Below the pieces are notes generated by a model. The model worked only from the letters and a program-made list of their open reading frames with translations. It made no database searches and was not told the DNA's origin. The position numbers and the translations under genes are program-made. Shown here in pieces: positions 5,258 through 58,084 of a DNA stretch of 64,000 nt (position 1 is the stretch's first letter; each line of letters opens with the position of its first letter). The stretch is from the IMG/VR virus record IMGVR_UViG_3300023202_000383, positions 124,001 through 188,000 of that record; one strand, 5' to 3'.

Positions 5258-5340
5258 GCGGGTGTGGCGGAACGGAAGACGCGGCAGGTTTAGGTCCTGC
5301 TGACCGCAAGGTCGTGGAGGTTCGACTCCTCTCACCCGTA
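5258..5340 (+). tRNA. tRNA-Leu(TAG)
   Basis: cloverleaf GCGGGTG/CACCCGT; anticodon arm GCAGG-TTTAGGT-CCTGC; long variable arm. Confidence 0.92.
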
Positions 5341-5348
5341 TTCGGATG

Positions 5349-5399
5349 ATTCGCACCTTAGATCAAATATAAGAAGGAGTATAGATCTGAGGTGCGAAT
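5349..5399 (+). promoter_or_regulatory. hairpin sequestering the SD of the endonuclease gene
   Basis: ATTCGCACCTTAGATC pairs with GATCTGAGGTGCGAAT (16 bp, one G-U), covering GAGGTG 5389-5394 just before ATG 5400. Confidence 0.6.
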
Positions 5400-6062
5400 A
5401 TGGCTGCAAAAATTGATGAAACAATTGTAAAAAAGATTATAAAATTAAGGCAAAATGGAGAACCGGTAAAAAGAATAGCAAAAATTGTTGGATGTTCCAG
5501 TAGCACTGCGTCAAAATATTGTCAAGATGTAAATATCGACAATATTGACAGACACAATAAGATTTGCAACGATACAAAAAGAGAAAATGCATTGGCAGCA
5601 AGCGATGTTGCTAGAGAAAAGTGGCGGCAAAGAAGGGATGAGGTAAAGCGGGCTGCTAAATCTGAATGGAATGAGATAAAAAGTGATCCTCTTATGGTTG
5701 CATTTTTAGGATTATATGCTGGTGAAGGTAAAAAGACAACGTCAACGATAGGAATATCCAACAATGACCCAAGAATTATAAGACTGTCACTAAAAGCAAT
5801 TAGGAAATTGGATCCTAATAAAACATTGTCAGCCAGGGTGGTTTATTACGAGTCACACAACCCAGACGAATGCATGAAGTTTTGGCGAGAGATTTTTGAT
5901 GAGAACGTCAAAATAAAATTGGTTAAAAATTCAGACAATAGGTGCCAAAATTTGTCAGAGCCGCATAAACGGTGCACATTTGGGAGATGTGATCTGGAAT
6001 ACAATAAGTTCCGAACTTATTGGCGAATAATGCAGTGGATTGACTGCATGTATGATATGTGA
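5400..6062 (+). CDS. HTH plus LAGLIDADG-like endonuclease family protein
   Basis: N-terminal HTH (VKRIAKIVGCSSSTASKY); FLGLYAGEGKK motif followed by ISNNDP; located between tRNAs. Confidence 0.6.
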   Translation: MAAKIDETIVKKIIKLRQNGEPVKRIAKIVGCSSSTASKYCQDVNIDNIDRHNKICNDTKRENALAASDVAREKWRQRRDEVKRAAKSEWNEIKSDPLMVAFLGLYAGEGKKTTSTIGISNNDPRIIRLSLKAIRKLDPNKTLSARVVYYESHNPDECMKFWREIFDENVKIKLVKNSDNRCQNLSEPHKRCTFGRCDLEYNKFRTYWRIMQWIDCMYDM

Positions 6063-6199
6063 TCTTTTGAAAGTTAATAACCGTGATCACTTGCTTAGGT
6101 AGAGCCGCAGCCCACTAAAGTAGCCGTGTTGCGTACGGCAGCCGAAGTAGGTGTCTACTGGTGGTCAGAGCCCAATATGATGGGTGGCCACCAGTATCA

Positions 6200-6273
6200 G
6201 CCCCTGTCGTCTAGTTTGGTTAGGACGTCGCCCTCTCACGGCGAAAACGCTGGTTCAAATCCAGTCAGGGGTA
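6200..6273 (+). tRNA. tRNA-Glu(CTC)
   Basis: anticodon arm TCGCC-CTCTCAC-GGCGA; GCCCCTG/CAGGGGT acceptor. Confidence 0.92.
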
Positions 6274-6278
6274 TTATT

Positions 6279-6365
6279 GGAAGAGTGGCCGAGCGGTAAG
6301 GCAGCAGTTTGCTAAACTGTAATAGGGGTAATTCTCTATCGCGGGTTCGATTCCCGCCTCTTCCG
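6279..6365 (+). tRNA. tRNA-Ser(GCT)
   Basis: loop TTGCTAA; long variable arm; G73. Confidence 0.92.
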
Positions 6366-6370
6366 TTTAT

Positions 6371-6457
6371 GGAATCGTGGCAGAGAGGCTGAATGCGTCG
6401 TCTTGGAAAGGCGATATGCACTTTTGTGCATCATGGGTTCGAATCCCATCGATTCCG
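6371..6457 (+). tRNA. tRNA-Ser(GGA)
   Basis: loop TTGGAAA; long variable arm; G73. Confidence 0.92.
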
Positions 6458-6482
6458 TTCCAAATATATCGAGGAGGAGAAG

Positions 6483-6563
6483 ATGGGGGAAATGTGGTTA
6501 TATGTCAGAGCGTTTTTTGACATGTTTTTTAAGTTCATAAAGGACGTCTTTGGGTCAAGATGA
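6483..6563 (+). CDS. 26-aa amphipathic peptide MGEMWLYVRAFFDMFFKFIKDVFGSR
   Basis: strong GAGGAGG SD and AAATATA motif upstream; below the ORF-track size cut-off. Confidence 0.45.
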   Translation: MGEMWLYVRAFFDMFFKFIKDVFGSR

Positions 6564-6657
6564 CGTCTCGTTGGCTTCCCTTTGCCTTTGGAGGTTAATA
6601 GGGTGTCCAGACCTATCCCAGAAAAGACCGCAAAAGAGAGCCCTTCCGGGCCTTACA

Positions 6658-6729
6658 GACCCCGTAGCTTAATGGGCAAAGCATCGGTTTCCGGAACCGA
6701 CGATGCGGGTTCAATTCTTGCCGGGGTTA
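6658..6729 (+). tRNA. tRNA-Arg(CCG)
   Basis: TCGGT-TTCCGGA-ACCGA anticodon arm; GACCCCG/CGGGGTT acceptor. Confidence 0.88.
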
Positions 6730-7259
6730 TTGATAAACATGTTAGGGATAAATCGGTAGCAATAATAGGAAATAGTAATTCTATATTTAATGGCAATTAT
6801 GGAGATACAATAGATTCTCATGATATAATTATTAGGATTAATAGGGGGCATGAGATAGAAAGCCCTAAATCCCAAGGATCAAAAACTGATATTTTGTCAA
6901 TATCTATCCCAATACCAGAAAAGCTAGTAACACCGATAATGCCTGAACTAGTAATATGGGCCACAAACAAGATTGGCAATATGCCGAAGTATAACAATAT
7001 AGTTATGGTCAGGAATAGTGACAGTGCATGGAAAAAGCTCTTTGACCAAATCGGATCGAGACCATCTACCGGCTTGATCACAATAAATCTGTTTGCTAAT
7101 TATATGAATTGTAAGAACATATCATTATTTGGATTCGATTTTTTTAAAACAAAGACGTTCTATCATACAGATAGGCGAATAAAGATGCCGCATGACGGCA
7201 AATCAGAGGAAGCATTCGTTAGAAAATTGGTTGGTCGGAAAAACCTAATGCTCTATTGA
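6729..7259 (+). CDS. glycosyltransferase family 29 (sialyltransferase)-like protein; start codon uncertain
   Basis: VAIIGNS...IDSHDIIIRIN...GSKTD (L-motif-like) and RPSTGLITI...FGFDFF (S-motif-like); ORF-track 5' part is the tRNA. Confidence 0.7.
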   Translation: MDKHVRDKSVAIIGNSNSIFNGNYGDTIDSHDIIIRINRGHEIESPKSQGSKTDILSISIPIPEKLVTPIMPELVIWATNKIGNMPKYNNIVMVRNSDSAWKKLFDQIGSRPSTGLITINLFANYMNCKNISLFGFDFFKTKTFYHTDRRIKMPHDGKSEEAFVRKLVGRKNLMLY

Positions 7260-7923
7260 ATTCTACCCCACCTGCCAGTTTAAACCATTGTTCCGCTGCA
7301 GGTGTCCATTCCTCTAAAGTAGTATTCTTACTTCTCTTGGTGAGATTTTGTTTTCTCAATGCTTCGTCTACTACAATGCTTGGGTCGATATGTTGAATGC
7401 CGAGAAACTCGACAATTCTGATAACTTCAGACATTGCTGTCGATTCATTTGTGATTGATTCGAATTTACATGGTAAATATTTAGATTCCATCCATCCGAT
7501 ATTCAGTTTTGCATGATTTAATATATAATTACCGCACCGCTTGATTGAATCAAGGTGATTTTTGAATTTACCACCCTGAGTGAGTCGGTGTCTACGCCAT
7601 GACAAAATGCAGTGGCGGAGTTCTCTATGCATAAATATAACTTTGCAATCTGATAATTGATTATGACACTGATATTGCACATGGCCGATACTGAATCCGT
7701 TTTCTGGTATCGCGTCTATTGACTCGCTGAGCGATCGTTTTATGGAACCATATTTTCCTTGCTCTTTTAGTTTGGCCATCTGCTCCAAACTATTGATACC
7801 TTTATTTACAATATATCGATCTTCTCTCACATGATGGCCGGTCCAATTAAGACCTAGTATGTCAAGATACTGGCACATTAGGTATGTACCTGATTTTGGG
7901 ATTGATGTTACGAATGCTTTCAT
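7219..7923 (-). CDS. sulfotransferase-like protein
   Basis: SIPKSGTYLM 5'-PSB-like loop; ATG 7923 overlaps the upstream TGA. Confidence 0.65.
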   Translation of the reverse strand: MKAFVTSIPKSGTYLMCQYLDILGLNWTGHHVREDRYIVNKGINSLEQMAKLKEQGKYGSIKRSLSESIDAIPENGFSIGHVQYQCHNQLSDCKVIFMHRELRHCILSWRRHRLTQGGKFKNHLDSIKRCGNYILNHAKLNIGWMESKYLPCKFESITNESTAMSEVIRIVEFLGIQHIDPSIVVDEALRKQNLTKRSKNTTLEEWTPAAEQWFKLAGGVEFNRALGFSDQPIF

Positions 7924-8537
7924 TTTGTTATCATTGCATTGCCGCATTCTAATGCAGCAAACTTCATGGAATAATCGTTGCTACAGAATTCCATAACTGC
8001 TTTTGTGCAACCTGGAAAATTTCCGCCTTTAGGCCACGGTCCAAAATCATCGATTATTATAATGCCGTGATCAACCATTCTTGGATAAAAGTATTCTAGC
8101 GATTGTTTTGTTGGATGATATAGATCAACATCAATATGAACGAAGCTGTACTTTTCTGTGTCTGATTGTTCAAAGACTTCTGGGATCCAGCCTTTGTGGA
8201 CGCTGATGTTGTCGGCCTCTTTAAGAACCCATTTTAGGTTATCAACTGATGATTTGAATTGGCCTTTTTTGCTTTTTGGGATGCGGTCTTTATCAGACGG
8301 CATGCTAAGGCCTTTAAATGAATCAAATATGTCGAATTGGCAATAATTCAAATAGTTTGATATTAAGTATGATGATAATCCTTTATAGCATCCAGCCTCC
8401 GCTATATTGCCATAGGGACACAAGCGAGCTATCTGGATCATATTGTAAAACCTTCGTCTCCTACGAGACAGATCCGGCATATTAGTCAGAGCGATAGCTC
8501 TGTCATATATTGTATTAAATTCGCTGAAAGGATGCAT
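7920..8537 (-). CDS. TylF/MycF-family O-methyltransferase
   Basis: IAEAGCYKGLS, FDSFKGL, KGWIPEVF, HIDVDLY, IIIIDDFG motifs. Confidence 0.85.
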   Translation of the reverse strand: MHPFSEFNTIYDRAIALTNMPDLSRRRRRFYNMIQIARLCPYGNIAEAGCYKGLSSYLISNYLNYCQFDIFDSFKGLSMPSDKDRIPKSKKGQFKSSVDNLKWVLKEADNISVHKGWIPEVFEQSDTEKYSFVHIDVDLYHPTKQSLEYFYPRMVDHGIIIIDDFGPWPKGGNFPGCTKAVMEFCSNDYSMKFAALECGNAMITK

Positions 8538-8556
8538 ATTTTATTTTTGTGATGAT

Positions 8557-8643
8557 GGTGGGATGGCAGAGCGGCTGAATGCGTTGGTTTTGAAAACCAA
8601 TAACGATTAACTTCGTTCGTGGGTTCGAATCCCACTCCCACCT
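8557..8643 (+). tRNA. tRNA-Ser(TGA)
   Basis: TTGGT-TTTGAAA-ACCAA; long variable arm. Confidence 0.9.
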
Positions 8644-8689
8644 TTTCTGCCCATTCTGCTGCCAAGGTCCTTACGCTCCCCCAAGTGAA

Positions 8690-8764
8690 TTAGCCCCGCT
8701 CGGCCTCGAACCGAGTTTTCCGGATTTAAAGCCCGGCGTGCTAACCAGGTACACTACGGGGCCA
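8690..8764 (-). tRNA. ochre-suppressor-type tRNA, anticodon TTA
   Basis: minus strand (T)GGCCCCG-TA-GTGT-ACCTGGTTA-GCAC-G-CCGGG-CTTTAAA-TCCGG-AAAA-CTCGG-TTCGAGG-CCGAG-CGGGGCT(A)-A. Confidence 0.85.
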
Positions 8765-8804
8765 CTTCCCGGACCAAGGATGACGTCCAGCAGGATGGGT
8801 ATTT

Positions 8805-8892
8805 GGAGCGTCAAGCAGATTGGCGACTGCACTGTTTTCGAACAGCAGCGAGCCTGAACAAGGCCTTGGGGGTTCGATTCCCTCACGCTCCG
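8805..8892 (+). tRNA. tRNA-Ser(CGA)
   Basis: CTGTT-TTCGAAC-AGCAG anticodon arm; long variable arm; G73. Confidence 0.82.
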
Positions 8893-8894
8893 TT

Positions 8895-9263: not shown

Positions 9264-9335
9264 CCTCCGTAGCTCAATTGGTAGAGCAGCGTGCTCTTAA
9301 CGCGTTTGTTGTAGGTTCGAGCCCTACCGGGGGTA
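9263..9335 (+). tRNA. tRNA-Lys(CTT)
   Basis: GCGTG-CTCTTAA-CGCGT. Confidence 0.9.
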
Positions 9336-9337
9336 TT

Positions 9338-9415
9338 GGGAGTGTAGCTCAGCTGGCAGAGTTCTCGGCTTTTAACCGAGCGTTTTGGGTTGCAAGCATT
9401 AACGGTGATGCACCT
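9338..9415 (+). pseudogene. tRNA fragments: 5' half of a Lys(TTT) tRNA followed by a second acceptor/D-arm remnant
   Basis: GGGAGTG-TA-GCTC..GAGT-T-CTCGG-CTTTTAA-CCGAG with no T-arm; then GGGTTGC-AA-GCAT-TAACGGTG-ATGC-A. Confidence 0.6.
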
Positions 9416-9488: not shown

Positions 9489-9522
9489 TTTAAAGCATAC
9501 TTATGTCATTAAAATATAAGTT

Positions 9523-15156: not shown

Positions 15157-15230
15157 GGCCCTGTATCCCAACTGGCAGAGGAATGACGCTTAAAACGTCA
15201 GAGTTGGCGGTTCGAATCCGCCCAGGGCTA
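15157..15230 (+). tRNA. tRNA-Leu(TAA), short variable loop
   Basis: TGACG-CTTAAAA-CGTCA; variable region only GAGTT. Confidence 0.85.
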
Positions 15231-18860: not shown

Positions 18861-18933
18861 CAGCGTTATGCCGAGCGGTTGAGGCGCTGCGTTTGGGGCG
18901 CAGATCTGGCTGGTTCGACTCCAGCAACGCTGA
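18861..18933 (+). tRNA. tRNA-Pro(TGG)
   Basis: CAGCGTT/AACGCTG, A73; CTGCG-TTTGGGG-CGCAG. Confidence 0.85.
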
Positions 18934-19994: not shown

Positions 19995-20067
19995 CCGCAT
20001 TTAGCTCAATTTGGTAGAGCGCTCGCTTTGGGGCGAGAGGTTGCAAGTTCAAATCTTGCAATGCGGA
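19995..20067 (+). tRNA. tRNA-Pro(TGG) with an anticodon arm one base short (atypical or pseudo)
   Basis: CCGCATT/AATGCGG; CTCGC-TTTGGG-GCGAG gives a 6-nt loop. Confidence 0.7.
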
Positions 20068-20102: not shown

Positions 20103-21020
20103 ATGAAATTCAATGAAATCGACTGGGATCTAATACAATCAGATTATGATTCGGGCCTTACTCTTAGGCAGGTTGGCAAGAGACATAAAATTGGCAATTC
20201 TAGTATCCATAAAGCACAAAAATCAGGACTTCTTAAGACTACGCGGAAGCGATCGTTATCAGAAGAGCATAGAAAAAAGCTTTCTGATAGTATGAAAAAA
20301 GCTGGTATAAGACCGCCCACAACTGTCAAGAGAGAAATTTCAAGCACTAAAGCATGTACTAAATGTACATGCTTGAAACCTATTAATCAATTCCATAAAA
20401 AAGATGGAGCATATGATGGTAGGCAATCAATATGCAAATCGTGCCGCAATATTCATGGTAGAAAATATATGTGCAAGCCGCATATAAACAAAAAACTCAA
20501 GAAACGAAAAGAAGAAATAAAATACAGAAATCAGAGATATATTAAAGAATATTTGTCGATGCATTCATGCAAGTGTGGTGTCGATGACATCAGACTTCTT
20601 GAATTCCACCATCTTAAAAATAAAAAATATGAAGTCCATCAAATGGTGTGGCACAAGTTAGAATCCATAGATAAAGAAATCGCAAAATGTGTTGTTTTGT
20701 GTGTTAATTGTCATAGAAGAGAAACAAATAAAGATAACCCTAGAGAGAATCAGAAGCATCGCAGGGCCATAAAATACAAATTAATAGAAGAAATTCATGG
20801 TACTAAATGTGTGGAGTGTGGGCTTGACGATAAGATAATTATGGATTTAAACCATATCGACCCAACGACCAAATTATTCAATATTGGCGGGTGGTCTGCG
20901 GGCGATACTGATGTATTGATTAAAGAGATAAAGAAATGTGAGCTTATCTGCCCTAATTGTCATCGTCTCAAAACTATTACACAGTCCGACAATTACCTTC
21001 ACAGGATAAAGGAGGCCTAA
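20103..21020 (+). CDS. HNH homing endonuclease with HTH and two tandem HNH domains
   Basis: CKCG...LEFHHL...CVVLCVNCHRRET and CVECG...LNHID...CELICPNCHRLKT. Confidence 0.85.
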   Translation: MKFNEIDWDLIQSDYDSGLTLRQVGKRHKIGNSSIHKAQKSGLLKTTRKRSLSEEHRKKLSDSMKKAGIRPPTTVKREISSTKACTKCTCLKPINQFHKKDGAYDGRQSICKSCRNIHGRKYMCKPHINKKLKKRKEEIKYRNQRYIKEYLSMHSCKCGVDDIRLLEFHHLKNKKYEVHQMVWHKLESIDKEIAKCVVLCVNCHRRETNKDNPRENQKHRRAIKYKLIEEIHGTKCVECGLDDKIIMDLNHIDPTTKLFNIGGWSAGDTDVLIKEIKKCELICPNCHRLKTITQSDNYLHRIKEA

Positions 21021-21021: not shown

Positions 21022-21794
21022 ATGGCCAGGAAACCAAGAATACCGGTTAAGAACAGGGGGCGGCTTTGACTCCGCTAAGAATGGTGGAGTAAGGGGGTGT
21101 CTTTGAAAATGCCACTGAAATTATCGTCGAAATCCAATTTGGCGAAGGTGGCGATGATAGCAAGTTGTTTGTGGACGACCTGTTATCTGCTTACTTGAAA
21201 TATGCCAAGTCGCTCGGTTTTAAGTCCGATCTGATATTCTCAGATAACGGGCATGCTACAATTAAAATCATTGGTAACAATGTTTGGAAGGCTTTTAGAT
21301 ATGAGCCTGGTAAACATTGTGTTCAGCGTATCCCACCAACAGAGAGCAAGGGTAGAGCGCAGACTTCTATTGTTTCTGTGGCTGTGTTGCCGATACCGCC
21401 CAAGATAGGCACTAAGCTTAAATCGAGTGATCTCAAAATTGAGAGGGTTAACCTCGGTGGAAAGGGCGGACAGCACCAGAATAAGACTCTATCTGGTTGC
21501 AGAATGACTCATATTCCAACTGGCCTTAAAGCAACCATCAATGGTAGAGATTACCATAGCAATGAGCGGGAAGCTAAGAGGATACTGGCTGCTAGAGTTC
21601 AGGAGCTTAAACAATCTAAAGCCAATGCTAATTACTCCGCAAAAAGAGTTGAGCAACTTGGGGGCGGAGGCAGGAGCGATAAGGTGAGAACTTACAACTT
21701 CATTAAATCTAGGGTTGTAGACCATAATCTTGGCACTAAGACCAGGAACATCAAGCAAGTGATGAAGGGCAACTTTGAGCTGTTGTTGAAATAA
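21022..21794 (+). CDS. class I peptide-chain release factor (RF1-like PxT, GGQ; domain 1 largely absent) expressed through two +1 frameshifts
   Basis: AGGAGG SD and ATG 21022; CTT-TGA at 21064-69 and 21101-06; then EIIVEIQFGEGGDD, HCVQRIPPTE, GGKGGQHQNKT, THIPTG, RSDKVRTYNF; predicted 256 aa. Confidence 0.85.
21055..21070 (+). promoter_or_regulatory. prfB-type +1 programmed frameshift cassette 1
   Basis: AGGGGG-CGG-CTT-TGA-C, same architecture as E. coli prfB AGGGGG-TAT-CTT-TGA-C. Confidence 0.88.
21092..21107 (+). promoter_or_regulatory. prfB-type +1 programmed frameshift cassette 2
   Basis: AGGGGG-TGT-CTT-TGA-A, in the +1 frame of cassette 1; its own +1 frame is the RF ORF. Confidence 0.88.
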
Positions 21795-34339: not shown

Positions 34340-37150
34340 TTAAAGGTTGATCTGGCATGTTCCACCAGCACATGCTGCTTCACCAGACAGGTCAGTGTTG
34401 TCTTCTTCCTCGTGGAAGTCTTCCCAATTTATTTTTGTATAATTTGAGATTAGCTCTTTCCACTTTGCTTCATCTGCGTCGGTGGATATTTCTTCAAATG
34501 GAGCGTTTTCATACTCTTTATCACCAGTAAATGCCAGCATTGATACGCCCGAGAAGTACTTCTTATTTTTCCACAAGAATTCTTTAACATCATCCCATTC
34601 ATCTTCCTTGACGCTTATCGTGTTAGACACATTGTGCGTGACCCCTGGAGATGAATCAGGCTTGGCGGTTCCGGGCGATACCCAATTCTTTTGAGTAGAC
34701 ATGACACGCTCAAGGAATTCAACAGCTGTGAAGTCCGATCTTATAAGTGCCCCATCTGGTGCCTTGACTGGGAACATTAGAAGATCTTTGTTCTTATTGA
34801 CAGTAATGCACATATGCGGATTATGTTTTTTAAATTCCTTGTATGCTTCGCATTGCGGATTTACTCTTATTCTTCTGAAATATCTTCTAGCGTGGTGGCA
34901 ATGATGGCCAGCACCTACGCCTCCAAGCACTAATGATGCGGTGCCGCTTGGTTTGACGCATGTTACTCTAGCTGCCGACCTTATTCCAATTTTGTTTGCG
35001 ATTTCAATATTGGTTTCGACAGCTATTTGAGCTGCTGTCTTCTGAACCTCCGGGCTTAGAGCAATATCTGGATTGTCCATTATACCAGTGAGAGATACTC
35101 CTAGAAGTGCCTCTCTAGTGCATATTGCTTCGCTGACCCATCCAAGATAACCAAAATCTGTATATCCTGCTTGAGCTGTGCCAAGTATAGCTGCTGCTTT
35201 TACTCTGTCATAAAACTCTTCTGTTGTGTCTGCAGTTGCACAATTTACCTCAGATAAATTACATTGCTGCCAGCCCCAGTAGGTTGAGCCGACTTTCAAT
35301 TTTGGGGTCTTTTTGCCATTCTCTTTGGCCCATTTTTCTGTCCATACTTTTATCTGTGGCGTGATTTCGAATTTTGGGTTCAACCCGATTTCGACGCATT
35401 GTCCTATTTGAATAGTATTGATGAATACTTCATTATTTGATGGTTCGTTTAGGCAGTACACCTGCTTCTTGCCAATATATTCAATAGCTTTAACTTTGGT
35501 ATAGTCGTAAGATCCCTGGGGATAAGCTAGCGGGATTCTATCGCCAATTTTTAAGTCTTTGCATTGTTTCCTGATTTTAGTCCTACCAGCAACAGCAGTA
35601 GCAGTAGATCCAGTACCGTTTTTGCGCCAGTTTCTCTTATCTTCAAGGACTATCCATTGATGATTGGAAGTAGTCTCTATTTGGTCACCATTCTGCAATG
35701 TTATTCTATATACCTTAGCAGATTTAGATGTCCTAAAAACATTCGATGCAATTGATCTACCGTGACTGTTGACTATATTCTGGACGCCATAATCATCGAG
35801 AGTCTTATGGCTAGCATATTCTTGGCGTCCTCCGTTTTCCCACAATTCTTCGATGGTCTTGTATCCATCGCTTGTCATTAGCTTCATGTTGCCAGTAAAG
35901 CACGGATTAGCCCCTGTATCTTCGTCATTAGTAAAATAAAATCCAGGCTCGCCCCATTGTCTTGTCGATTTGAATATTCTGTCGTATTGTCTCTTCTTTG
36001 TCTCTTTACGATGCAAAACAACAGAGTTGTTAGACCTAGCCCTCCATGGATGAGTCTCGCCCCATTTGCCAGTCTTGGCATTCATCATTTCGCCATCGTC
36101 AATAGAAAACAGGCATATCATTGCCGCTTCTCTGATGCCGCCAGCGTAAACAGCGTCTGCCAATGAGCACATGATGTCATAACATTCTATTGGTCTTAGG
36201 TGTCTTCCTTGTGCTAAGTCTAGAATGCTTCTGGATCTATCTAATGCCTGCTTAAGCGGTAAGTGTCCAGGTGCCTTCCCGCCGCTTGTTTTAAGAGGAG
36301 ATCCCTTAGGTCTTATCTTGCCGTATGAGAACTCTACGTATGTTCCCGTATGCATATAGGATCTGATCAATTCGTGTGCTGCATCTGCCCAGCCTTCGAT
36401 TGTGTCTGGTATAGCAAAATGTTTTACATTGTCACTATCGATTCTTTTAAGCTCTGGCAACTGATCTACATGCTGGAATTGAACAGAGAACCCAACTCCA
36501 GTTCCACTCAACAGCAACCAGAAAGCTTCTGCAAAAAATTTTGGTCTGTTGCAAACAGAGAATGAGCAGTTGTAGCCTTTAGCGTGATTCAATTCTTGAG
36601 CAGGTCCTCCGAATTGCATAGATCTCATTGATCCAAGCACCTGCTTGTCCCGTACCTTATCCATTACCCAATCTAATTCGCCCTTAATTTGCGGGTATCG
36701 GTCAGCGTGCATTTTGTGCACTCTGTCTACACACTCTTCATAGGTTTCTCGCCTTTTCAGATCTTCTCTGTAGCGAGAATATCGCATTCTTACTACGAGA
36801 TCTTCTATTATTGTTGGGTCTGGGTCTAGACGAGTCTTTCTTAGATCGTCTTTGTGTCTACTATATAATATGTATTCTTCTGCAACACCGTGAAATTGAT
36901 AATCCATCAGTTTACGTTTGACGATTTGTTGAATGTCGTCGACGCCTATTCGATTGTCGCTGTCTAATCTGACAAATGCTTCATCTTCTATCGCTTTTAA
37001 AAGATGATCGAATTTCCCATTAATGTCTGTGCTAGCATCTTTTGCTGCTTTTTGGATCGCTATCTTTATTTTGTCTGGATTCCAGTCTACTGATGTTTTC
37101 CCATCTCTTTTGATAACTTTAGCGGACGCCTTCGTAAGTGGTGACATCAT
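34340..37150 (-). CDS. nrdJ: class II (B12-dependent) ribonucleotide reductase with ATP-cone and intein
   Basis: ATP-cone VIKRDG; SMRSMQFGG; YNCS; NPC-intein-CVEI; TCVKPSGTAS; C-terminal EAACAGGTC. Confidence 0.9.
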   Translation of the reverse strand: MMSPLTKASAKVIKRDGKTSVDWNPDKIKIAIQKAAKDASTDINGKFDHLLKAIEDEAFVRLDSDNRIGVDDIQQIVKRKLMDYQFHGVAEEYILYSRHKDDLRKTRLDPDPTIIEDLVVRMRYSRYREDLKRRETYEECVDRVHKMHADRYPQIKGELDWVMDKVRDKQVLGSMRSMQFGGPAQELNHAKGYNCSFSVCNRPKFFAEAFWLLLSGTGVGFSVQFQHVDQLPELKRIDSDNVKHFAIPDTIEGWADAAHELIRSYMHTGTYVEFSYGKIRPKGSPLKTSGGKAPGHLPLKQALDRSRSILDLAQGRHLRPIECYDIMCSLADAVYAGGIREAAMICLFSIDDGEMMNAKTGKWGETHPWRARSNNSVVLHRKETKKRQYDRIFKSTRQWGEPGFYFTNDEDTGANPCFTGNMKLMTSDGYKTIEELWENGGRQEYASHKTLDDYGVQNIVNSHGRSIASNVFRTSKSAKVYRITLQNGDQIETTSNHQWIVLEDKRNWRKNGTGSTATAVAGRTKIRKQCKDLKIGDRIPLAYPQGSYDYTKVKAIEYIGKKQVYCLNEPSNNEVFINTIQIGQCVEIGLNPKFEITPQIKVWTEKWAKENGKKTPKLKVGSTYWGWQQCNLSEVNCATADTTEEFYDRVKAAAILGTAQAGYTDFGYLGWVSEAICTREALLGVSLTGIMDNPDIALSPEVQKTAAQIAVETNIEIANKIGIRSAARVTCVKPSGTASLVLGGVGAGHHCHHARRYFRRIRVNPQCEAYKEFKKHNPHMCITVNKNKDLLMFPVKAPDGALIRSDFTAVEFLERVMSTQKNWVSPGTAKPDSSPGVTHNVSNTISVKEDEWDDVKEFLWKNKKYFSGVSMLAFTGDKEYENAPFEEISTDADEAKWKELISNYTKINWEDFHEEEDNTDLSGEAACAGGTCQINL
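35399..35902 (-). mobile_element. mini-intein (168 aa), C1...Gln end, at the catalytic NPC|EI site
   Basis: CFTGNMKLMT N-terminus; KQVYCLNEP...VFINTIQIGQ followed by C+1; no endonuclease motif. Confidence 0.85.
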
Positions 37151-40574: not shown

Positions 40575-41606
40575 GTGAATAAAATTGTATTTAGACATCA
40601 TTTATCGCCTGGAGATATAGTGTGCATGACTGCGGCGATCCGCGATCTGCATATGAACCATAGCGGTAAGTTTGAGACTGGCGTTGATACAACTGCAATG
40701 CAGGTTTGGCAGGGCAATCCATATATTACCAAATTCAACCATAAAGATATAGTAAAGCTAGACAACGACAAAGATGATAAATATAGAGCTACCCACGACG
40801 AAATAAAAGAAATATGGGATTCTGGCAAGATCCCATCAGTGAAGCTTCATTATGATTTGATCCATCAATCGAACACTTGCACTGGCCATTTTATAGATGG
40901 GTTTTGCGATGGCATAGAAGATCTTCTAAATGTTAGAATAAAGAACCGCAAATGTTATGGTGACATATATATATCTGATGTCGAGCGGTCATGGGTGTCT
41001 CAAGTCCAAGAAGTGACTGAATCTGACACCCATTTCTGGATAGTTGTGAATGGCGGAAAATACGACTTCACATGCAAATGGTGGGATCCATTTAGGATGC
41101 AGAAGGTCGTAAACGCTATGAGACACATAACATTTGTGCAAGTTGGTGAAAAAGGGCACAACCATCATCCATTGGTTGGCCCAAATGTGATAGATTTTAT
41201 AGGCAAAACAGACATTAGGCAGCTGATAAGATTAGTGTATCATAGTAGTGGAGCCATATGTCCGGTTACATTTATGATGCATCTGGCGGCTGCTGTGCCA
41301 GTAAGGCCAGAAAAGACGTATGCTAGAAAAACAAGGCCTTGTGTTGTTATTGCTGGGGGCAGAGAGCCCTCCAGATGGGAAGCATATACCAATCATGCAT
41401 ATTTGCACAAATGTGGTACACTAGCATGCTGCGACAATGGTGGGTGTTGGAAGTCTAGAGTTGTTCCTTTAGGTGACGAAGATGAGAAAGATAAGGATCT
41501 CTGTTTAGATCCAGTTACCACAGAAAATGGTATAATCGTCCCTAAATGTATGAAAATGATAACAGTGTCTGATGTTATAGAAGCTATTGAAAGCTATTTA
41601 CCATAG
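40575..41606 (+). CDS. glycosyltransferase family 9 (heptosyltransferase)-like
   Basis: SPGDIVCMTAAIRDLH; TCKWW; DFIGKTDIRQLIRLVYHS; HLAAA. Confidence 0.75.
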   Translation: MNKIVFRHHLSPGDIVCMTAAIRDLHMNHSGKFETGVDTTAMQVWQGNPYITKFNHKDIVKLDNDKDDKYRATHDEIKEIWDSGKIPSVKLHYDLIHQSNTCTGHFIDGFCDGIEDLLNVRIKNRKCYGDIYISDVERSWVSQVQEVTESDTHFWIVVNGGKYDFTCKWWDPFRMQKVVNAMRHITFVQVGEKGHNHHPLVGPNVIDFIGKTDIRQLIRLVYHSSGAICPVTFMMHLAAAVPVRPEKTYARKTRPCVVIAGGREPSRWEAYTNHAYLHKCGTLACCDNGGCWKSRVVPLGDEDEKDKDLCLDPVTTENGIIVPKCMKMITVSDVIEAIESYLP

Positions 41607-41614: not shown

Positions 41615-43234
41615 ATGCCGAAGGATATCATTTTTGATGAGTCAGTTAGAAGCAAGATCCAAGACGGTCTCAACAAGCTGGCCCAAGCAGTCAGAGTGAC
41701 TTTGGGGCCGACTGGCCGTGTTGTCATGATTGAAAGGGATTTTGGAGACCCTATCATAACGAAGGATGGGGTCACTGTAGCCAAACACATAGATCTTGAA
41801 GATAAGCTGTCGAATATGGCTGCAATGATGGTGCGTCAGGCGGCGTCCAAAACTGCCTCTGAGGCTGGAGATGGCACAACGACTGCTACTATTTATACTG
41901 AAGCAATATATGGTGCTGGTATAAAGAGTGTTCTGGCTGGGGCTAATCCTCAAGATCTCAAAAATGGGATGAATAAAGCTGTACAGGCTATCGTCCATCA
42001 ACTTGAGAGAATGGCTAAGCCTATAACCAGCACAGAAGAGATAAAGCAGGTCGCTGCGTGCAGCGCCAATCAAGACAATATTATAGGGTCTATAATTGCC
42101 GACGCTATGGATAAAGTCGGCAAAGATGGCGTTGTCACAATAGAAGAAGGCAAGACGTTGGATACTTCGGTATCTGTTGTCGATGGTTATCAATTCGATA
42201 AAGGATATATGAGCCAACATTTTGTGACCAATAAGGAAAAGATGGTCGCTGAATACGAGGAGCCCTATATACTGTTGAGCGAAGATCGAATCGACGATCT
42301 TAAAAGCCTCTTGGGGATGCTTGAGCTCGCAATCAAGAAGGGCCAAAGGCCGATAGTTATCATAGCCGATGATTTTGATGATACGGTCATGACGACTTTG
42401 ACTGTCAATCACTTAAGGGGGTCGTTGAAAGTGTTGGCTATAAAGTCCCCCGGCTTTGGCGACAGACGTAAGCAGATGATGGAAGATATAGCAACAATAA
42501 CTGGTGCGAAGGTCTTCTCCAAGGCATCTGGCGTGACAATGAAGAATCCTAGCATAGACGCTTTTGGGTCGTGCGAAAAGATCACTGCGTCTGATGATTC
42601 CACTATTATAGTGGAAGGTGCTGGCGATGAATCTGAAATAGAAGAAAGAATAAATCAGATCAGGACTCAGCTCGAATCTGTTGGTGGCGATTTTGATAAA
42701 GAAAAGCTCCAAGAAAGGCTTTCTAAGCTGATAGGCGGCGTTGCTAGAATTGTCGTCGGCGGTGCTACAGAAGTTGAAGTTAGAGAAAAGAAAGATCGCA
42801 TCGACGACGCTTTACATGCTTGCAAAGCTGCTGTTCAAGAAGGAATATTGCCTGGCGGTGGTGTTGCTGTTCTACGAGCTTTCCAATCTGTTTCTCTGGA
42901 GTTTGATTCTAGAGATGAGGAAATGGGAGTTGGCATAATATTCAAAGCCATAGAAGATCCAATAAGGCAAATCGCCAAGAATACTGGCAAGGATGATGGT
43001 GCTGTTCTCGCTAAAGTGATGGAAAGCAGCGATGCCAACTTTGGGTTCAATGCTGCCAAGGATTCCTTCGAAAATCTGATCGACGCTGGCATAATCGTCC
43101 CAGCCAAGGTTGAGAGGATTGCATTGCAAAATGCCGCATCTATAGCTGCCTTACTTCTTGCTACGGATTGCATGATATCTATAATTCCTGAAGTCGCACC
43201 CGCACAGCCTGACGGGATATATCCAGGGATGTAG
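41615..43234 (+). CDS. groEL: chaperonin GroEL
   Basis: TLGPTGR, ITKDGVTVAK, GDGTTTAT, PGFGDRRK, GGGVA. Confidence 0.97.
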   Translation: MPKDIIFDESVRSKIQDGLNKLAQAVRVTLGPTGRVVMIERDFGDPIITKDGVTVAKHIDLEDKLSNMAAMMVRQAASKTASEAGDGTTTATIYTEAIYGAGIKSVLAGANPQDLKNGMNKAVQAIVHQLERMAKPITSTEEIKQVAACSANQDNIIGSIIADAMDKVGKDGVVTIEEGKTLDTSVSVVDGYQFDKGYMSQHFVTNKEKMVAEYEEPYILLSEDRIDDLKSLLGMLELAIKKGQRPIVIIADDFDDTVMTTLTVNHLRGSLKVLAIKSPGFGDRRKQMMEDIATITGAKVFSKASGVTMKNPSIDAFGSCEKITASDDSTIIVEGAGDESEIEERINQIRTQLESVGGDFDKEKLQERLSKLIGGVARIVVGGATEVEVREKKDRIDDALHACKAAVQEGILPGGGVAVLRAFQSVSLEFDSRDEEMGVGIIFKAIEDPIRQIAKNTGKDDGAVLAKVMESSDANFGFNAAKDSFENLIDAGIIVPAKVERIALQNAASIAALLLATDCMISIIPEVAPAQPDGIYPGM

Positions 43235-54738: not shown

Positions 54739-55233
54739 TTACTTGTAATCATCCAAATCTAATTCCTGGGAGACATGATCTCCGTGGTCTTTTACTTTAT
54801 CGTCATCGTTTTCTAGGTCTCTTTCTGATATTTGATTATCGTAATCACTGACCGTCGTGTCCACGACCTTACCTGGCCCTACTGCATTAGGGATTCTATA
54901 GGTCCATTTCTTTTTAATGGATTCTAATTCAGATTCTATATCTGGTTTCTTAACTACTTCTGGTTCCGGTTTTTCTTGGTCTGGGGGAGATACAGATCTA
55001 CCACTACCGCGTCGCTGTTTCATCTTTATCAGCTTTTGCGGTAGTGGTAGATCTTTAAATGGGATTCGAACGAGTCCCTTGTGAAACTTCTTATCTACAG
55101 TGGCAGGCAAATCCTGTTGAGGACTATTTCTTACTCGCCGGGAGTTCCTGCTTCTGTTTTTCAATGAATACACTCGCTTGCTTGACGGAATCGAAATAAC
55201 CTTCTGGATGGTCTTCCGCCCTACGCCACTCAA
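54739..55233 (-). CDS. hypothetical protein
   Basis: 164-aa ORF. Confidence 0.55.
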   Translation of the reverse strand: MSGVGRKTIQKVISIPSSKRVYSLKNRSRNSRRVRNSPQQDLPATVDKKFHKGLVRIPFKDLPLPQKLIKMKQRRGSGRSVSPPDQEKPEPEVVKKPDIESELESIKKKWTYRIPNAVGPGKVVDTTVSDYDNQISERDLENDDDKVKDHGDHVSQELDLDDYK

Positions 55234-57094
55234 ACTTCTCGCCGCTAGAGGTCTGGCCCGCCTTGGTTATTTCTTTTTGCCATTGCTGGACTTCATATTT
55301 GCCTTGTATCGTCTTTCCGTCATCGTCTTTTGCTGGCATTATCTTAAACGCGCGTCCGGTGTTACCACGCACATCCTTGTACTTCTTGCTGAGCTCTGGA
55401 TCTTTTTCAGATACATGTCTAAACTTCTTAATTGCGGACTTGATATCTTTGTTGACTTTAATTCCAGTCTTCCCCATGATCTTGCCAATCGCAGTAGGGC
55501 CATGCTTGACTCGCGGCCGCTTAATATATTCTTTGTACTGCTCGATCTGCGCATTTATTTGATCGGCGGCTGGATGATCAGCTGGTGCCTTAAGGCCGAA
55601 ATAAAGTCTAAGAGCCGTTTCCTGGCCTGGAGTTAGGTATGATTGGCCCATAAAATCTTGGCTAGATGCTTTATCGAAAAAGCCCTTGATGAGTGATGCT
55701 CTAAGGGCTTTTTCATCTCTAGTAGCCATTTGTGTTTCTGGTTTCGGAGGTTTTGGCTTTTCAGGCGATCTCTCATCTTTTACGGCAATCGTGCCTTTAC
55801 CGGCCCTTCCACCCTTGCCAAGCTGTTTTGCGACACCGCCACACATATCACAGCCAACTAGGAATTTGCGGCCCCCATATTCCATTTCTACGACGCCGCC
55901 GCCGCTTAGTTTCAATTCCACTCCCGGATTGATGGCTTTATCGTCCGCGCGTCGCAGATCTGCAATTCCAGCGTCTTTGAGTGATTTGCGGTTTTGTCTA
56001 GCGATCATTTTCCAGAGACTTTCATCACCAAATACGTCTCTGGCTATGCTTTTGAGAGTATCACCCTCTTTTGTTTCGTATGTTTCTTTAGATCCGCACT
56101 GTGGGCATATCTTCTTGGCCATAAATGCATCAACATGGCCCTGTATGTCATGCATCGACCCTTCGTCGTCGCCAACGGGAGCATCCATTGATTGGATTAC
56201 ATCGCCGACTTTTTGGCCTTTCGTTCTGGCTGTTCTAGTATCGACCTGAGAACGACCTTGCTTGTATGCACGGCGGTCGGCTCGTCTGCTCATTGCATTG
56301 AAGACGTGACCAGAGAATGGCTGAATACCCTTGTCGGTCTTCAGTGCCTGCATGATAGCAAACGTGGCTTCTTGGAATGCATCTCCAAGATCCATGCTGC
56401 GTTGGCGGCGTACGATTTTAGAAATCGGGCCTTTAACGCCGGAAGCTTCCCCACCCTTGAACTTCAGTCCGCCAAGGGCTTCAACGATTTCCGCTATAGT
56501 CCATGGTTGTCTACCGATTCTGTCGAGAGCCAGGGGAAGCTTGACATTCTTCAGATGTCTATAGTCCGGGAAGTCGGGATCATTGCGATACCCCTCTGGG
56601 TTGCTGTCCGACACTTCTCCTACATGCGTCTTTTCTTTTCCAGTTGCAGTTCTGTACTTCTCGTTGTCGGCTCTGAATTTCTGGATAGCAGCGAGGATTT
56701 CTTCGTCGAAGATATTGCCTTGCTCGTCTGCATTGCCAGCGAGGTCATATTCCTTGCCATCTACAGTTATCTGGTCTGGAAGACCACTGATACTCTTTTT
56801 GGATTTGTCTTCATCTCCTTCATCGGCCTTTGTGATTATTTTTATAGCATAGTCATCGTCATCCAGGCTGCTGCCGAGACCGCCTTCTTCCTTAGACATC
56901 TCAATGTATTCTGCGGCACCCTCGCGGTCCGTGAATTTACTGGAAACGGGCTCCCCTGATTTGTCTACAACAACATACTCATAGTTATCCTCGTCGAAAA
57001 ACACATCCTCAAGCAGGATCGGTGCTTCGACAAGATACAATACACCATGACTACGTATGAACATAACGAACCTCCTATTAGTAGATTTGCCCAA
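55124..57094 (-). CDS. sigma70-like protein with an inserted Zn-ribbon/LysM module
   Basis: region 2 DLGDAFQEATFAIMQAL...FSGHV; region 3 SMDAPVGDD; LysM YETKEGDTLKSIA...LWKMIARQN; region 4 LTPGQETALRLYFGL...AIGKIMG. Confidence 0.65.
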   Translation of the reverse strand: MGKSTNRRFVMFIRSHGVLYLVEAPILLEDVFFDEDNYEYVVVDKSGEPVSSKFTDREGAAEYIEMSKEEGGLGSSLDDDDYAIKIITKADEGDEDKSKKSISGLPDQITVDGKEYDLAGNADEQGNIFDEEILAAIQKFRADNEKYRTATGKEKTHVGEVSDSNPEGYRNDPDFPDYRHLKNVKLPLALDRIGRQPWTIAEIVEALGGLKFKGGEASGVKGPISKIVRRQRSMDLGDAFQEATFAIMQALKTDKGIQPFSGHVFNAMSRRADRRAYKQGRSQVDTRTARTKGQKVGDVIQSMDAPVGDDEGSMHDIQGHVDAFMAKKICPQCGSKETYETKEGDTLKSIARDVFGDESLWKMIARQNRKSLKDAGIADLRRADDKAINPGVELKLSGGGVVEMEYGGRKFLVGCDMCGGVAKQLGKGGRAGKGTIAVKDERSPEKPKPPKPETQMATRDEKALRASLIKGFFDKASSQDFMGQSYLTPGQETALRLYFGLKAPADHPAADQINAQIEQYKEYIKRPRVKHGPTAIGKIMGKTGIKVNKDIKSAIKKFRHVSEKDPELSKKYKDVRGNTGRAFKIMPAKDDDGKTIQGKYEVQQWQKEITKAGQTSSGEKFEWRRAEDHPEGYFDSVKQASVFIEKQKQELPASKK

Positions 57095-57103
57095 CTGGTT
57101 CTT

Positions 57104-58084
57104 TTATCGCCCTCTGATATATTCTTCGAACAATTCGCAGGCGTTATCCTTGAATTGTTCGAGATCATTCTTGGTAGCAAGCCCGTTGCTCAATGCAAGA
57201 TCGAACTCGTCGTCGAGCCTGCAGCCGAATTGTATGGGATCGTCTGTGTTTAGAGTGATCCTACAACCGGCTTCAATCATTCTTTTTATAGGATGGTCCC
57301 CTATCGATTTTACGACCCCAGTGTAGAGATTGCTGTGGAGGGCCAAATCAAAGGTGATCCCCTGGTTGTTGCACATGTCAAGAATCTCTTTAGAGGCTTG
57401 GATTCCGTGTGCTATTCGATCGACGCCACTACATTTTACCACATCTTCAACGTGCTTGCAAGTATCTGGCAGCTCACCCACATGTGCACGAACGTGCTTA
57501 CCGGCTTTGCGCCAGTTTTCGATGAGTGGTTTGTAAAAGTCGATATCAAAGGCTGCCTCATCCCCAACGAGGTCCATTCCAACAAAATGACGCGCTATCT
57601 CATCATCAAAAATTATATCGGCAAATCGCTTTTGATCATCTCTAGAGGACTCGTACTTTAAAGACAATAACAGGCCGACATTTACGTTATGTCTTTTAGA
57701 CGACTCTTCGAGGTTGCGTGTTATTATCTCAGCTGCTTTATGGACCGACCAGTTGTGGTGCTTAGTAAACTTGTTTAGTGACAAGCTTATTTCAGAGAAA
57801 TCAATATTATCCTCTCTGAGATCTTTACAGACCTGGTCGACCATTATTCTTATGGCCCACTCATCCCACGTAATCTCATCCAGAATTTGGAATTTAGTTA
57901 AGAATGTCTTGAAATCATTTTTGTCGCCACGAGAGAATCTCATGGCTTTGTTTACTTCTCGAAATGATTTAGCTATATGGTATGATTTAGATTTATTTAT
58001 TATTGACCATACAGTTTCAGGGGATATAGACCCACCTAGCTAAAGGTGGCGATGAATGTCGCACCTTGGACGTTCAATCGCCAC
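57104..58084 (-). CDS. add: adenosine/adenine deaminase with an in-frame TAG at codon 15 (CTT-TAG-CTA)
   Basis: AGGAGG SD and GTG 58084; DIHRHL*LGGSISPET; RAHVGE, RIAHG, LNTDDP; the ORF track shows only the 57104..57943 part. Confidence 0.85.
58037..58045 (-). promoter_or_regulatory. candidate stop-hop / readthrough site CTT-TAG-CTA
   Basis: Leu-amber-Leu inside the HxHLGGS motif; removing 6 nt restores the consensus. Confidence 0.7.

What the first reader, a model, noticed from the sequence alone, without database searches (positions are those of the whole stretch)
5258..58084. Possible phage termination-sensing circuit touching UGA, UAG and UAA
Seen in one window: UGA-dependent double frameshift (release factor), UAG-dependent hop/readthrough (deaminase), a UAA/UAG suppressor tRNA, and tRNA-Leu(UAG). 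All three recoding sites take off from the same CUU Leu codon. Inference: the phage may use stop-codon decoding efficiency as a switch. Low RF2 would induce the phage RF1-like factor, which would compete at the UAG in add, while the suppressor opposes it. This could time gene expression or respond to host anti-translation defence. The genome otherwise uses code 11, unlike known recoded phages.
Basis: inference. Interest (0 to 1): 0.85.

Follow-up and report, generated by a model that had tools for sequence, protein, structure and literature searches.

The report
Two stop-codon recoding devices in phage
A huge phage carries a release-factor gene that needs two ribosomal frameshifts and a deaminase gene that needs ribosomes to skip a stop codon; relatives show both tricks are conserved, but they are not shown to form one circuit.

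Summary
All four elements are real and lie at the stated places. (1) The release-factor gene (21022-21794, +) has two tandem prfB-type +1 frameshift cassettes (AGGGGG, 3 nt, CTT TGA) 37 nt apart. They sit in front of an RF1-type protein that lacks domain 1. Of 19 distinct relatives, 15 have one or two such CTT-stop cassettes, and these use TGA, TAG or TAA. (2) The adenosine deaminase gene (57104-58084, -) reads HRH-L(CTT)-TAG-L(CTA)-GGS, where homologues read HRH-L-GGS. Twelve other phage add genes, scattered over the add tree, carry a 2-7 nt insert that starts with a stop at this same codon. In all but one, landing just before GGT restores the consensus, which favours a short translational hop over readthrough or decay. 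(3) The tRNA with anticodon UUA (8690-8764, -) and tRNA-Leu(UAG) (5258-5340, +) are good tRNA genes. The window uses the standard code. The proposed circuit is only partly supported. RF and add recoding occur independently among relatives, but a complete relative with a two-site RF also has an amber suppressor tRNA. RF1-type frameshifting and natural stop-hops are both listed as unknown in the reviews I read.

The parts
5258..5340 (+). tRNA-Leu, anticodon UAG, long variable arm. It is the one tRNA type able to pair with both CUU (take-off) and CUA (landing).
   Evidence: ARAGORN; Rfam tRNA 48.4 bits; fold. The pairing argument rests on general knowledge of U34 wobble.
8690..8764 (-). Suppressor-type tRNA, anticodon UUA (reads UAA and, by wobble, UAG). 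It is the only tRNA on the minus strand. Which amino acid it carries is unknown.
   Evidence: ARAGORN; Rfam 55.9 bits; cloverleaf with loop CUUUAAA. The closest tRNA in the window is only 67% identical.
21022..21069 (+). RF leader, frame 0: ATG, 14 sense codons ending in CTT, then TGA. First +1 cassette: AGGGGG 21055-60, CGG, CTT 21064-66, TGA 21067-69, then C.
   Evidence: Sequence; motif count 2 against 0.04 expected; the same layout in relatives.
21068..21106 (+). RF leader, second frame: 12 codons (DSAKNGGVRGCL), then TGA. Second +1 cassette: AGGGGG 21092-97, TGT, CTT 21101-03, TGA 21104-06, then A.
21105..21794 (+). Main frame of the release factor: 229 codons covering domains 2-4 only. 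PPT tripeptide at 21333-41, GGQ at 21465-73.
   Evidence: NCBIfam prfA 224 bits (profile positions 102-334 of 347) against prfB 134. Pfam PCRF C-terminal half plus RF-1. PDB RF1 156 bits against RF2 112, aligned from RF1 residue ~106.
58040..58084 (-). add, first piece: GTG start after AGGAGG, then MAIERPRCDIHRHL (holds the HxH metal-binding motif), take-off CTT 58045-43, TAG 58042-40.
   Evidence: homologue alignment.
57104..58039 (-). add, second piece, same frame: landing CTA 58039-37, then GGSISPETVW and onward for 311 codons to TAA.
   Evidence: Pfam A_deaminase 126 bits; TIGR01430 144 bits; alignment A1.
58092..58415 (-). Rrf2-like small regulator directly upstream of add. Its stop overlaps the add ribosome-binding site. 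The pairing is conserved in relatives.
   Evidence: Pfam Rrf2 30 bits; the same gene order in L126 and L128.

Best explanation
The window holds two separate 'shifty-stop' recoding devices, each conserved in evolution. In both, a peptidyl-tRNA-Leu sits on CUU in the P site while a poorly terminated stop (followed by C or A) waits in the A site. Device 1: a phage release factor of RF1 type lacks domain 1 and is made only if ribosomes shift +1 twice, at two prfB-like cassettes (internal Shine-Dalgarno AGGGGG, 3-nt spacer, CUU UGA). Failure at either site releases a peptide of 15 or 27 residues. Output therefore falls roughly with the square of termination efficiency at UGA. Host RF2 sets that efficiency, because the phage factor is predicted to read only UAA and UAG. 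Feedback can still close indirectly: the phage factor takes over UAA stops and so frees RF2. Device 2: add carries a 6-nt coding gap (UAG CUA). The most likely decoding is a +6 hop. Peptidyl-tRNA-Leu leaves CUU, the mRNA slides, the tRNA re-pairs with CUA, and reading resumes at GGU, giving the consensus HRHLGGS. The result would be low, termination-sensitive expression of the deaminase. The phage's own tRNA-Leu(UAG) is the tRNA type that fits both codons. The UUA suppressor tRNA is a real gene. Its link to either device is unproven. It could read the add UAG, which would give a product two residues longer. Shown: the sequences, the frames, the family assignments and the conservation. Inferred: that frameshifting and hopping actually occur, their efficiencies, the factor's codon specificity and any regulatory purpose.
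For: RF. The cassettes match the prfB design and occur only at this gene. In the 19 distinct relatives of the truncated RF1-type gene, 6 have two CTT-stop sites 34-49 nt apart, 9 have one and 4 have none. The 21 sites use TGA 12 times, TAG 7 times and TAA twice. Most have GGAGG- or AGGGGG-like runs 3 nt upstream. The close sisters L054 and L001 differ only in TAG against TAA at site 1, so a stop is kept while its identity drifts. All six aligned members score RF1 above RF2, and most relatives keep PPT. add. 87 of 120 database homologues have exactly one residue between HxH and GG, and none has three. Thirteen loci, the window included, carry an insert that starts with a stop at this codon: CUU UAG CUA (window, L284), CUU UAA CUA (L182), CUU UGA CUA (L209), CUC UGA CUU (L194, L199, L221, L224), CUC UAG G and CUA UAG G (+2; L207, L282, L283), AUG UAG C UUG (+7; L281), and the odd case L216. 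In every case except L216, landing on the codon just before GGU restores the consensus. The +2 and +7 forms cannot be rescued by readthrough. The take-off and landing pairs co-vary so that one tRNA can read both: CUU/CUA for anticodon UAG, CUC/CUU for anticodon GAG. The recoded genes are otherwise intact and are scattered on the tree (at least 5 changes, at least 3 forced by strong branches). Cellular-type ADA genes (HRHLEGS) never show the insert.
Against: There are no expression data of any kind. Unassisted stop-hops in E. coli constructs are described as low-level, so the yield may be small. The CCACCU/AGGUGG hairpin around the site (-9.9 kcal/mol) is not universal; L199 lacks it. L216 does not fit a simple hop. 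The patchy tree needs either repeated gain or repeated exact loss of the insert, and I cannot say which. RF specificity is read from motifs only, and three relatives have PKN, PDN or PPN instead of PPT. Four relatives lack a CTT-stop site, and I did not establish a start codon for two of them. The host is unknown.
Confidence: 0.6

Rival explanations
1. Low RF2 switches on the phage RF1-like factor. That factor then shuts down the UAG event in add, while the UUA suppressor pushes the other way. The four parts would be one evolved timing or defence-sensing switch.
For: Each arrow is mechanistically possible. UGA sites feed an RF1-type factor, add has a UAG site, and a UUA tRNA is present. LR756511.1, a standard-code relative with a two-site RF, also has an amber suppressor tRNA. 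On the only other contig with both genes, neither is recoded.
Against: The elements are distributed largely independently. The add stop is UAA or UGA in other phages, so no fixed RF1-add pairing exists. The suppressor has no close relative in IMG/VR by its anticodon arm. tRNA-Leu(UAG) is a generic member of the tRNA sets. The co-occurrence counts are n=2.
Confidence: 0.15
2. The add stop is decoded by readthrough, not hopping. The phage UUA tRNA or a near-cognate host tRNA inserts an amino acid at UAG, giving a deaminase with two extra residues (X-Leu) after HRHL.
For: A suppressor able to wobble-read UAG is encoded 49 kb away. The stop is followed by C, a weak termination context (own knowledge). 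The in-frame variants are compatible with this.
Against: None of 120 homologues has a sense codon at this place, although one mutation would create it. All three stops are used in different phages, which would need different suppressors. The +2 and +7 variants cannot be rescued by readthrough. The Leu codon after the stop is always kept.
Confidence: 0.15
3. The add genes with inserts are dead or dying genes. A mutation-prone palindrome (CACCTAGGTG) collects small insertions. Only the RF frameshifts are functional.
For: The site lies in a palindrome made by the His-Leu-Gly-Gly codons, and hairpins can template insertions (inference). The close syntenic relatives L126-L128 are intact.
Against: In 13 loci the insert always begins with a stop placed directly after the Leu or Met codon, and in 12 of them the insert ends so that a landing codon precedes GGT. 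None shows a second lesion in about 300 downstream codons at 32-57% divergence. The short first piece keeps its start, ribosome-binding site and HxH motif.
Confidence: 0.08

Closest known systems
prfB (RF2) autoregulatory +1 frameshift of bacteria
   Same: CUU UGA C shift site, an internal Shine-Dalgarno-like AGGGGG 3 nt upstream, a short frame-0 leader and the main body in +1, and a product that is a class-I release factor.
   Different: The product is RF1-type, so it should not read the UGA it depends on. There are two cassettes in tandem. Relatives use TAG and TAA as well as TGA. The protein lacks domain 1. The gene is on a phage. The 2025 survey found no programmed frameshift in prfA and never found TAG in the prfB motif (PMC12421855). 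The 2016 review calls the RF1 counterpart unknown (PMC5009743).
Mimivirus/Megavirus class-I release factor gene (Jeudy et al. 2012, PMC3521657)
   Same: A virus-encoded termination factor whose translation must pass two internal stops by recoding, read as bacterial-style autoregulation.
   Different: That factor is of eukaryotic/archaeal eRF1 type and uses one frameshift plus one readthrough. Here a bacterial RF1-type factor uses two +1 frameshifts of the same design.
Synthetic 'stop-hops' in E. coli (Weiss, Dunn, Atkins, Gesteland 1987, as described in PMC5009743)
   Same: Matched codons flank a stop, so that 9 nt specify one amino acid. The product is two residues shorter than a readthrough product.
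   Different: Those were engineered constructs with low yield. The review states that no natural occurrences are known. Here the arrangement sits in natural genes, is conserved, and has +2 and +7 relatives at the same codon.
Phage T4 gene 60 translational bypass
   Same: A phage gene with take-off and landing codons read by one tRNA, a UAG directly after take-off, and a local hairpin in some members.
   Different: The gap is 2-7 nt, not 50. No nascent-peptide signal is evident (only 14 residues have been made). There is no mobile-element context and no sequence homology.
Code-change modules of recoded phages (suppressor tRNA plus release factor; Borges et al. preprint 10.1101/2021.08.26.457843)
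   Same: A phage carries a suppressor tRNA and a release factor.
   Different: In those modules the factor spares the reassigned stop (RF2 with TAG recoding, RF1 with TGA recoding) and many genes hold in-frame stops. Here the tRNA and the factor act on the same codons, and the genome uses the standard code.

Membership tests
prfB-type programmed +1 frameshift cassette | Shift site CUU followed by a stop, with the +1 frame open into the main body | tested here: met
   Two sites, CTT TGA C and CTT TGA A. The frames chain from ATG 21022 to the stop at 21794.
prfB-type programmed +1 frameshift cassette | Internal Shine-Dalgarno-like element about 3 nt 5' of the CUU | tested here: met
   AGGGGG plus 3 nt at both sites. 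Similar runs are present in most relatives.
prfB-type programmed +1 frameshift cassette | The encoded factor recognises the stop in the cassette (direct autoregulation) | tested here: not met
   The product scores as RF1 (224 against 134 bits) and has a PxT-type tripeptide, PPT. RF1 reads UAA and UAG, not UGA. This rests on motifs only; no biochemistry was done.
Peptide chain release factor 1 (prfA equivalog) | Score above the NCBIfam curated cut-off, and full length with domain 1 | tested here: not met
   224 bits against a cut-off of 400. The match covers profile positions 102-334 of 347, so the N-terminal ~100 residues are absent.
Peptide chain release factor 1 (prfA equivalog) | GGQ hydrolysis motif and PxT codon-recognition tripeptide with the flanking Gln and Thr | tested here: met
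   GGQ is at residues 121-123 and VQRIPPTESKGRAQTS is present. These residues are invariant in alignment A2.
Stop-hop / short translational bypass | Take-off and landing codons readable by one tRNA, flanking a stop | tested here: met
   CUU-UAG-CUA in the window. CUU/CUA and CUC/CUU pairs occur in relatives.
Stop-hop / short translational bypass | The product lacks the residues of the gap | not testable with these tools
   Indirect only. The homologue consensus has no residues there (87 of 120 with one residue, 0 with three).
Stop-codon reassignment (code 4 or 15 phages) | Many genes with in-frame stops, and low coding density under code 11 | tested here: not met
   87% of the window is coding under code 11 and all three stops end genes. 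Making any stop sense gains nothing. No other broken gene was found in the window.
Suppressor tRNA | tRNA fold with an anticodon complementary to a stop | tested here: met
   Rfam 55.9 bits; 7-nt loop CUUUAAA.
Suppressor tRNA | The tRNA is aminoacylated and suppresses in vivo | not testable with these tools
   No close paralogue to suggest an identity (67% at best). No promoter could be called.

The most novel reading that the evidence does not exclude
Phage adenosine deaminase genes hold the first natural family of programmed short-range translational bypasses (stop-hops over 2-7 nt). Huge phages also regulate an RF1-type factor by one or two prfB-style frameshifts at any of the three stops. 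Together these would mean that such phages read out the cell's termination capacity, codon by codon, to set the expression of particular genes. Suppressor tRNAs would be a third, adjustable input.
Probability: 0.4. Interest if true: 0.9.

Novelty: new variant of a known kind. Interest (0 to 1): 0.8.

Why it matters
Two gaps in the recoding literature become directly testable. First, the field has said for decades that RF2 is autoregulated by frameshifting and RF1 is not, and that TAG never occupies that cassette. Here a whole family of RF1-type genes uses the cassette, singly or doubled, with TGA, TAG or TAA. This allows a clean comparison of self-sensing (UAG, UAA) with sensing of the other factor (UGA). 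It also allows a test of what a second site adds, for example a steeper response or coupling through ribosome queuing at 34-49 nt spacing. Second, in-frame stop-hopping has been a laboratory curiosity since 1987 with no natural case. The add site offers a dozen natural variants at one codon, with built-in controls: unrecoded sisters, three stops, and +2, +6 and +7 gaps. For phage biology it suggests that large phages with their own tRNAs and factors tune single genes through the termination step without changing the genetic code.

Tried and rejected
1. Megablast of the RF and add regions against GenBank phages found no match, so the phage is known only from metagenomes.
2. A single-sequence search for add in IMG/VR found only the window's own contig; the alignment-based search was needed.
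3. At first I took the add insert to be lineage-specific, because the syntenic relatives L126-L128 are intact. I dropped that view when the same site turned up recoded in distant relatives.
4. An exact 15-mer of the suppressor's anticodon arm found 50 IMG/VR stretches. Only the window's own contig holds a suppressor tRNA there.
5. A scan for two long open frames joined by one stop was too noisy to use. A scan for CTT-stop sites with a long +1 frame found only the RF site plus chance hits inside ordinary genes.
6. A promoter and terminator scan around the suppressor tRNA gave counts no better than shuffled sequence.
7. The hairpin as a required signal was rejected, because L199 lacks it.
8. Selenocysteine or pyrrolysine at the add stop was rejected, because all three stops occur at the site.
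9. Reinitiation after the stop was rejected as a route to active enzyme, because the product would lack the HxH metal ligands.
10. An L-stop-L scan of the complete relative LR756511.1 found nothing convincing.
11. The DNA for P0033 and P0077 could not be fetched. One fold (L284) used the wrong coordinates and is not used.


Full report
WHAT IS THERE. The window is part of IMG/VR contig UViG_3300023202_000383 (256.5 kb; the same sequence also lies on a 332-kb JGI contig). It has 41.7% G+C, 26 tRNA genes and dense standard-code genes.

THE RELEASE FACTOR. From ATG 21022 the frame runs 14 codons to CTT TGA (21064-69). One base forward, a second frame runs 12 codons to CTT TGA (21101-06). One base forward again, a 229-codon frame runs to 21794. 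Both CTT codons are preceded by AGGGGG and a 3-nt spacer. The degenerate motif occurs only at these two places in 64 kb, against 0.04 expected. This is the design of the bacterial prfB frameshift site, used twice, 37 nt apart.

The long frame encodes domains 2-4 of a class-I release factor. It matches Pfam PCRF (C-terminal half only) plus RF-1. NCBIfam gives prfA 224 bits against prfB 134, covering profile positions 102-334. In the PDB it scores 156 bits to RF1 and 112 to RF2, aligned from about residue 106 of RF1. It keeps GGQ and the recognition loop VQRIPPTESKGRAQTS. This is a PxT-type tripeptide with the flanking Gln and Thr of RF1. By established knowledge of the tripeptide rule, it predicts reading of UAA and UAG but not UGA. 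That prediction is an inference; I did not test specificity.

RELATIVES OF THE FACTOR. Searches of IMG/VR and GenBank phages gave 19 distinct relatives of this truncated RF1-type gene at 43-65% identity, mostly on contigs of 100-600 kb and often inside tRNA arrays.
- Six have two CTT-stop sites 34-49 nt apart: the window (TGA, TGA), L048 (TAA, TGA), L051 (TAG, TAG), L054 (TAG, TGA), L063 (TAG, TAG) and LR756511.1 (TAA, TGA).
- Nine have one site: seven with TGA and two with TAG.
- Four have none detected.

The codon before CTT is usually TGT, and most sites have a GGAGG- or AGGGGG-like run 3 nt upstream. L054 and LR756511.1 are close sisters that differ in TAG against TAA at the first site, and the window's sister L048 has TAA where the window has TGA. 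So a stop is conserved while its identity drifts. Most relatives keep PPT whatever the stop; three have PKN, PDN or PPN. All six aligned members score RF1 above RF2. A more distant G+C-rich lineage (L067-L069) has CTT TGA at a different place, inside domain 2, in an RF-like gene that has no PxT.

WHAT THE LITERATURE SAYS ON THE FACTOR. A 2025 survey of 12,753 genomes found no programmed frameshift in prfA and never found TAG in the prfB motif (PMC12421855). The 2016 review states that the RF1 counterpart is unknown (PMC5009743). Phage release factors have been reported only as parts of code-change modules in recoded phages. The nearest precedent is the Mimivirus eRF1-type gene, which needs one frameshift and one readthrough (PMC3521657).

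THE DEAMINASE. On the minus strand, GTG 58084 follows AGGAGG and the stop of an Rrf2-like gene. The frame reads MAIERPRCDIHRHL, then TAG, then L-GGSISPETVW and 300 further codons of an adenosine deaminase (Pfam 126 bits). The first piece holds the HxH metal ligands, so the second piece alone would be inactive. A contig from a different sequencing run is identical across the site. Homologues read K(Y/C)D(I/L)HRH(L/M)GGSISP without interruption. The window therefore has six extra bases, TAG CTA.

I first thought this was a private mutation, because three syntenic relatives are intact. An alignment-based search changed that view. At the very same codon:
- L182 has CTT TAA CTA.
- L209 has CTT TGA CTA.
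- L284 has CTT TAG CTA.
- L194, L199, L221 and L224 have CTC TGA CTT.
- L207 has CTC TAG G with the body in the +2 frame.
- L282 and L283 have CTA TAG G, also +2.
- L281 has ATG TAG C TTG, a gap of 7.
- L216 has CAC TGA TGT AGG, which I cannot fit.

In every case but L216, if the peptidyl-tRNA on the Leu or Met codon re-pairs with the triplet just before GGT, the product is the family consensus. The in-frame pairs are CUU/CUA and CUC/CUU. Each pair is readable by a single tRNA-Leu, with anticodon UAG and GAG respectively (general wobble knowledge). The base after the stop is always C in the in-frame forms.

Of 120 database homologues, 87 show exactly one residue between HxH and GG, none shows three, and the rest are truncated calls. 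On a maximum-likelihood tree the recoded genes are scattered: at least 5 changes, of which at least 3 are forced by well-supported branches. Cellular-type deaminases (HRHLEGS) never show the insert. These facts argue against decay, since the genes are intact after deep divergence. They also argue against simple readthrough: all three stops occur, no sense version exists, and the out-of-frame variants cannot be read through. The arrangement is that of the synthetic stop-hop, for which the 2016 review says no natural occurrences are known. A 2024 preprint from the same school still describes stop-hopping only as a low-level event in constructs. A hairpin CCACCU/AGGUGG brackets the site in the window (-9.9 kcal/mol) and in several relatives but not in all. 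It largely follows from the His-Leu-Gly-Gly codons, and I do not count it as a signal.

THE tRNAs. The UUA tRNA is a sound tRNA by ARAGORN, Rfam (55.9 bits) and folding. It lies antisense between two tRNA-Ser genes, next to minus-strand methyltransferase and sulfotransferase genes. No promoter could be called and it has no close paralogue. Its anticodon arm has no tRNA counterpart elsewhere in IMG/VR. No suppressor occurs among 534 tRNAs in 1.23 Mb of relatives' loci. tRNA-Leu(UAG) is common in these phages.

THE CIRCUIT. Gene presence is largely independent. Only the window's contig and one other (3300032132_000001) carry both the RF and add, and the recoded add contigs are not among the RF hits. 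LR756511.1 has the RF but no add. I fetched all 595 kb of LR756511.1. It uses the standard code. It has 63 tRNAs, including two tRNA-Leu(UAG) and an amber suppressor (anticodon CUA; Rfam 65 bits). It has no L-stop-L site of note. So in both large sequences of this clade that I could inspect, an RF1-type gene with a double frameshift coexists with a suppressor of RF1-specific stops. On the one other contig with both genes, neither add nor the RF is recoded. These are two anecdotes. They keep a link between the factor and the suppressor open, but they do not show a circuit, and they give no support for add as its designed output.

HOW IT MOST LIKELY WORKS. Both devices convert slow termination into product.
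- For the factor, two sites in series multiply two probabilities. This gives low basal output and a steeper rise when RF2 is limiting. At 34-49 nt spacing, a ribosome waiting at site 2 would hold the next one near site 1; this is an inference prompted by work on collisions at prfB. Because UAA is the commonest stop here, an RF1-type factor would relieve RF2 and close the loop indirectly.
- In relatives with UAG or UAA sites, the loop is direct.
- For add, a hop gives a small fraction of full-length enzyme. That fraction depends on RF1 activity at UAG and on a tRNA-Leu able to pair at both codons, which the phage supplies.

I put 0.6 on this overall picture: about 0.9 that the RF frameshifts are functional, about 0.8 that the add site is functional recoding of some kind, and about 0.65 that the recoding is a hop.

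LIMITS. There are no expression data. The host is unknown. Only 64 kb of the phage was available.

Noticed in passing
window 19995-20067 (+): A tRNA (Rfam 62.9 bits) that resembles tRNA-Pro(UGG) but has a 6-nt anticodon loop, UUUGGG (or an 8-nt loop if the closing C-G pair opens). ARAGORN could not name it. It lies just upstream of the operon that ends in the RF gene. The normal tRNA-Pro(UGG) is at 18861-18933.
   Followed up: partly
LR756511.1 290614-290689 (complement) = L291 about 40614-40689: The complete relative has a tRNA that ARAGORN reads with a four-base anticodon, gaaa (an enlarged loop). This is the shape of classical +1 frameshift-suppressor tRNAs. It was not examined further.
   Followed up: no
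LR756511.1 179588-179661 (complement) = L289 29589-29661: An amber suppressor tRNA (anticodon CUA, Rfam 65 bits) in a standard-code 595-kb phage that also has the two-site RF1-type gene.
   Followed up: partly
window 15157-15230 (+): A 74-nt tRNA with anticodon UAA (a Leu codon, UUA) that lacks the long variable arm expected of bacterial tRNA-Leu. Short 'Leu' tRNAs also occur beside the RF gene in L062.
   Followed up: no
window 8640-8800: The minus-strand suppressor tRNA is flanked by imperfect inverted repeats (cccatTctgctg...ccaaggtcc on the left, ggaccaagg...cagcaggatggg on the right). This may be a trace of an inversion or insertion.
   Followed up: no
L067, L068, L069 (RF match at 4001): G+C-rich phages carry an RF-like gene that lacks the PxT tripeptide. 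It has AAGGAG, 3 nt, then CTT TGA C placed inside domain 2 (after GEGGxDAxRFAKE). This is a second, differently placed prfB-like cassette.
   Followed up: partly
IMG/VR contig 3300032132_000001: L189 (add) and L050 (RF): add and the RF1-type gene lie about 6 kb apart on a 395-kb contig, and neither gene is recoded there.
   Followed up: partly
window 34340-37150 (-): A ribonucleotide reductase with an ATP-cone and an intein splicing domain (Pfam).
   Followed up: no
window 41615-43234 (+): A phage-encoded Cpn60/GroEL-type chaperonin (Pfam 248 bits).
   Followed up: no
window 20103-21020 (+): A 305-residue Cys/His-rich protein with no family match. Its stop abuts the RF start (TAA at 21018-20, ATG at 21022), so it is probably co-translated with the RF leader.
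   Followed up: no
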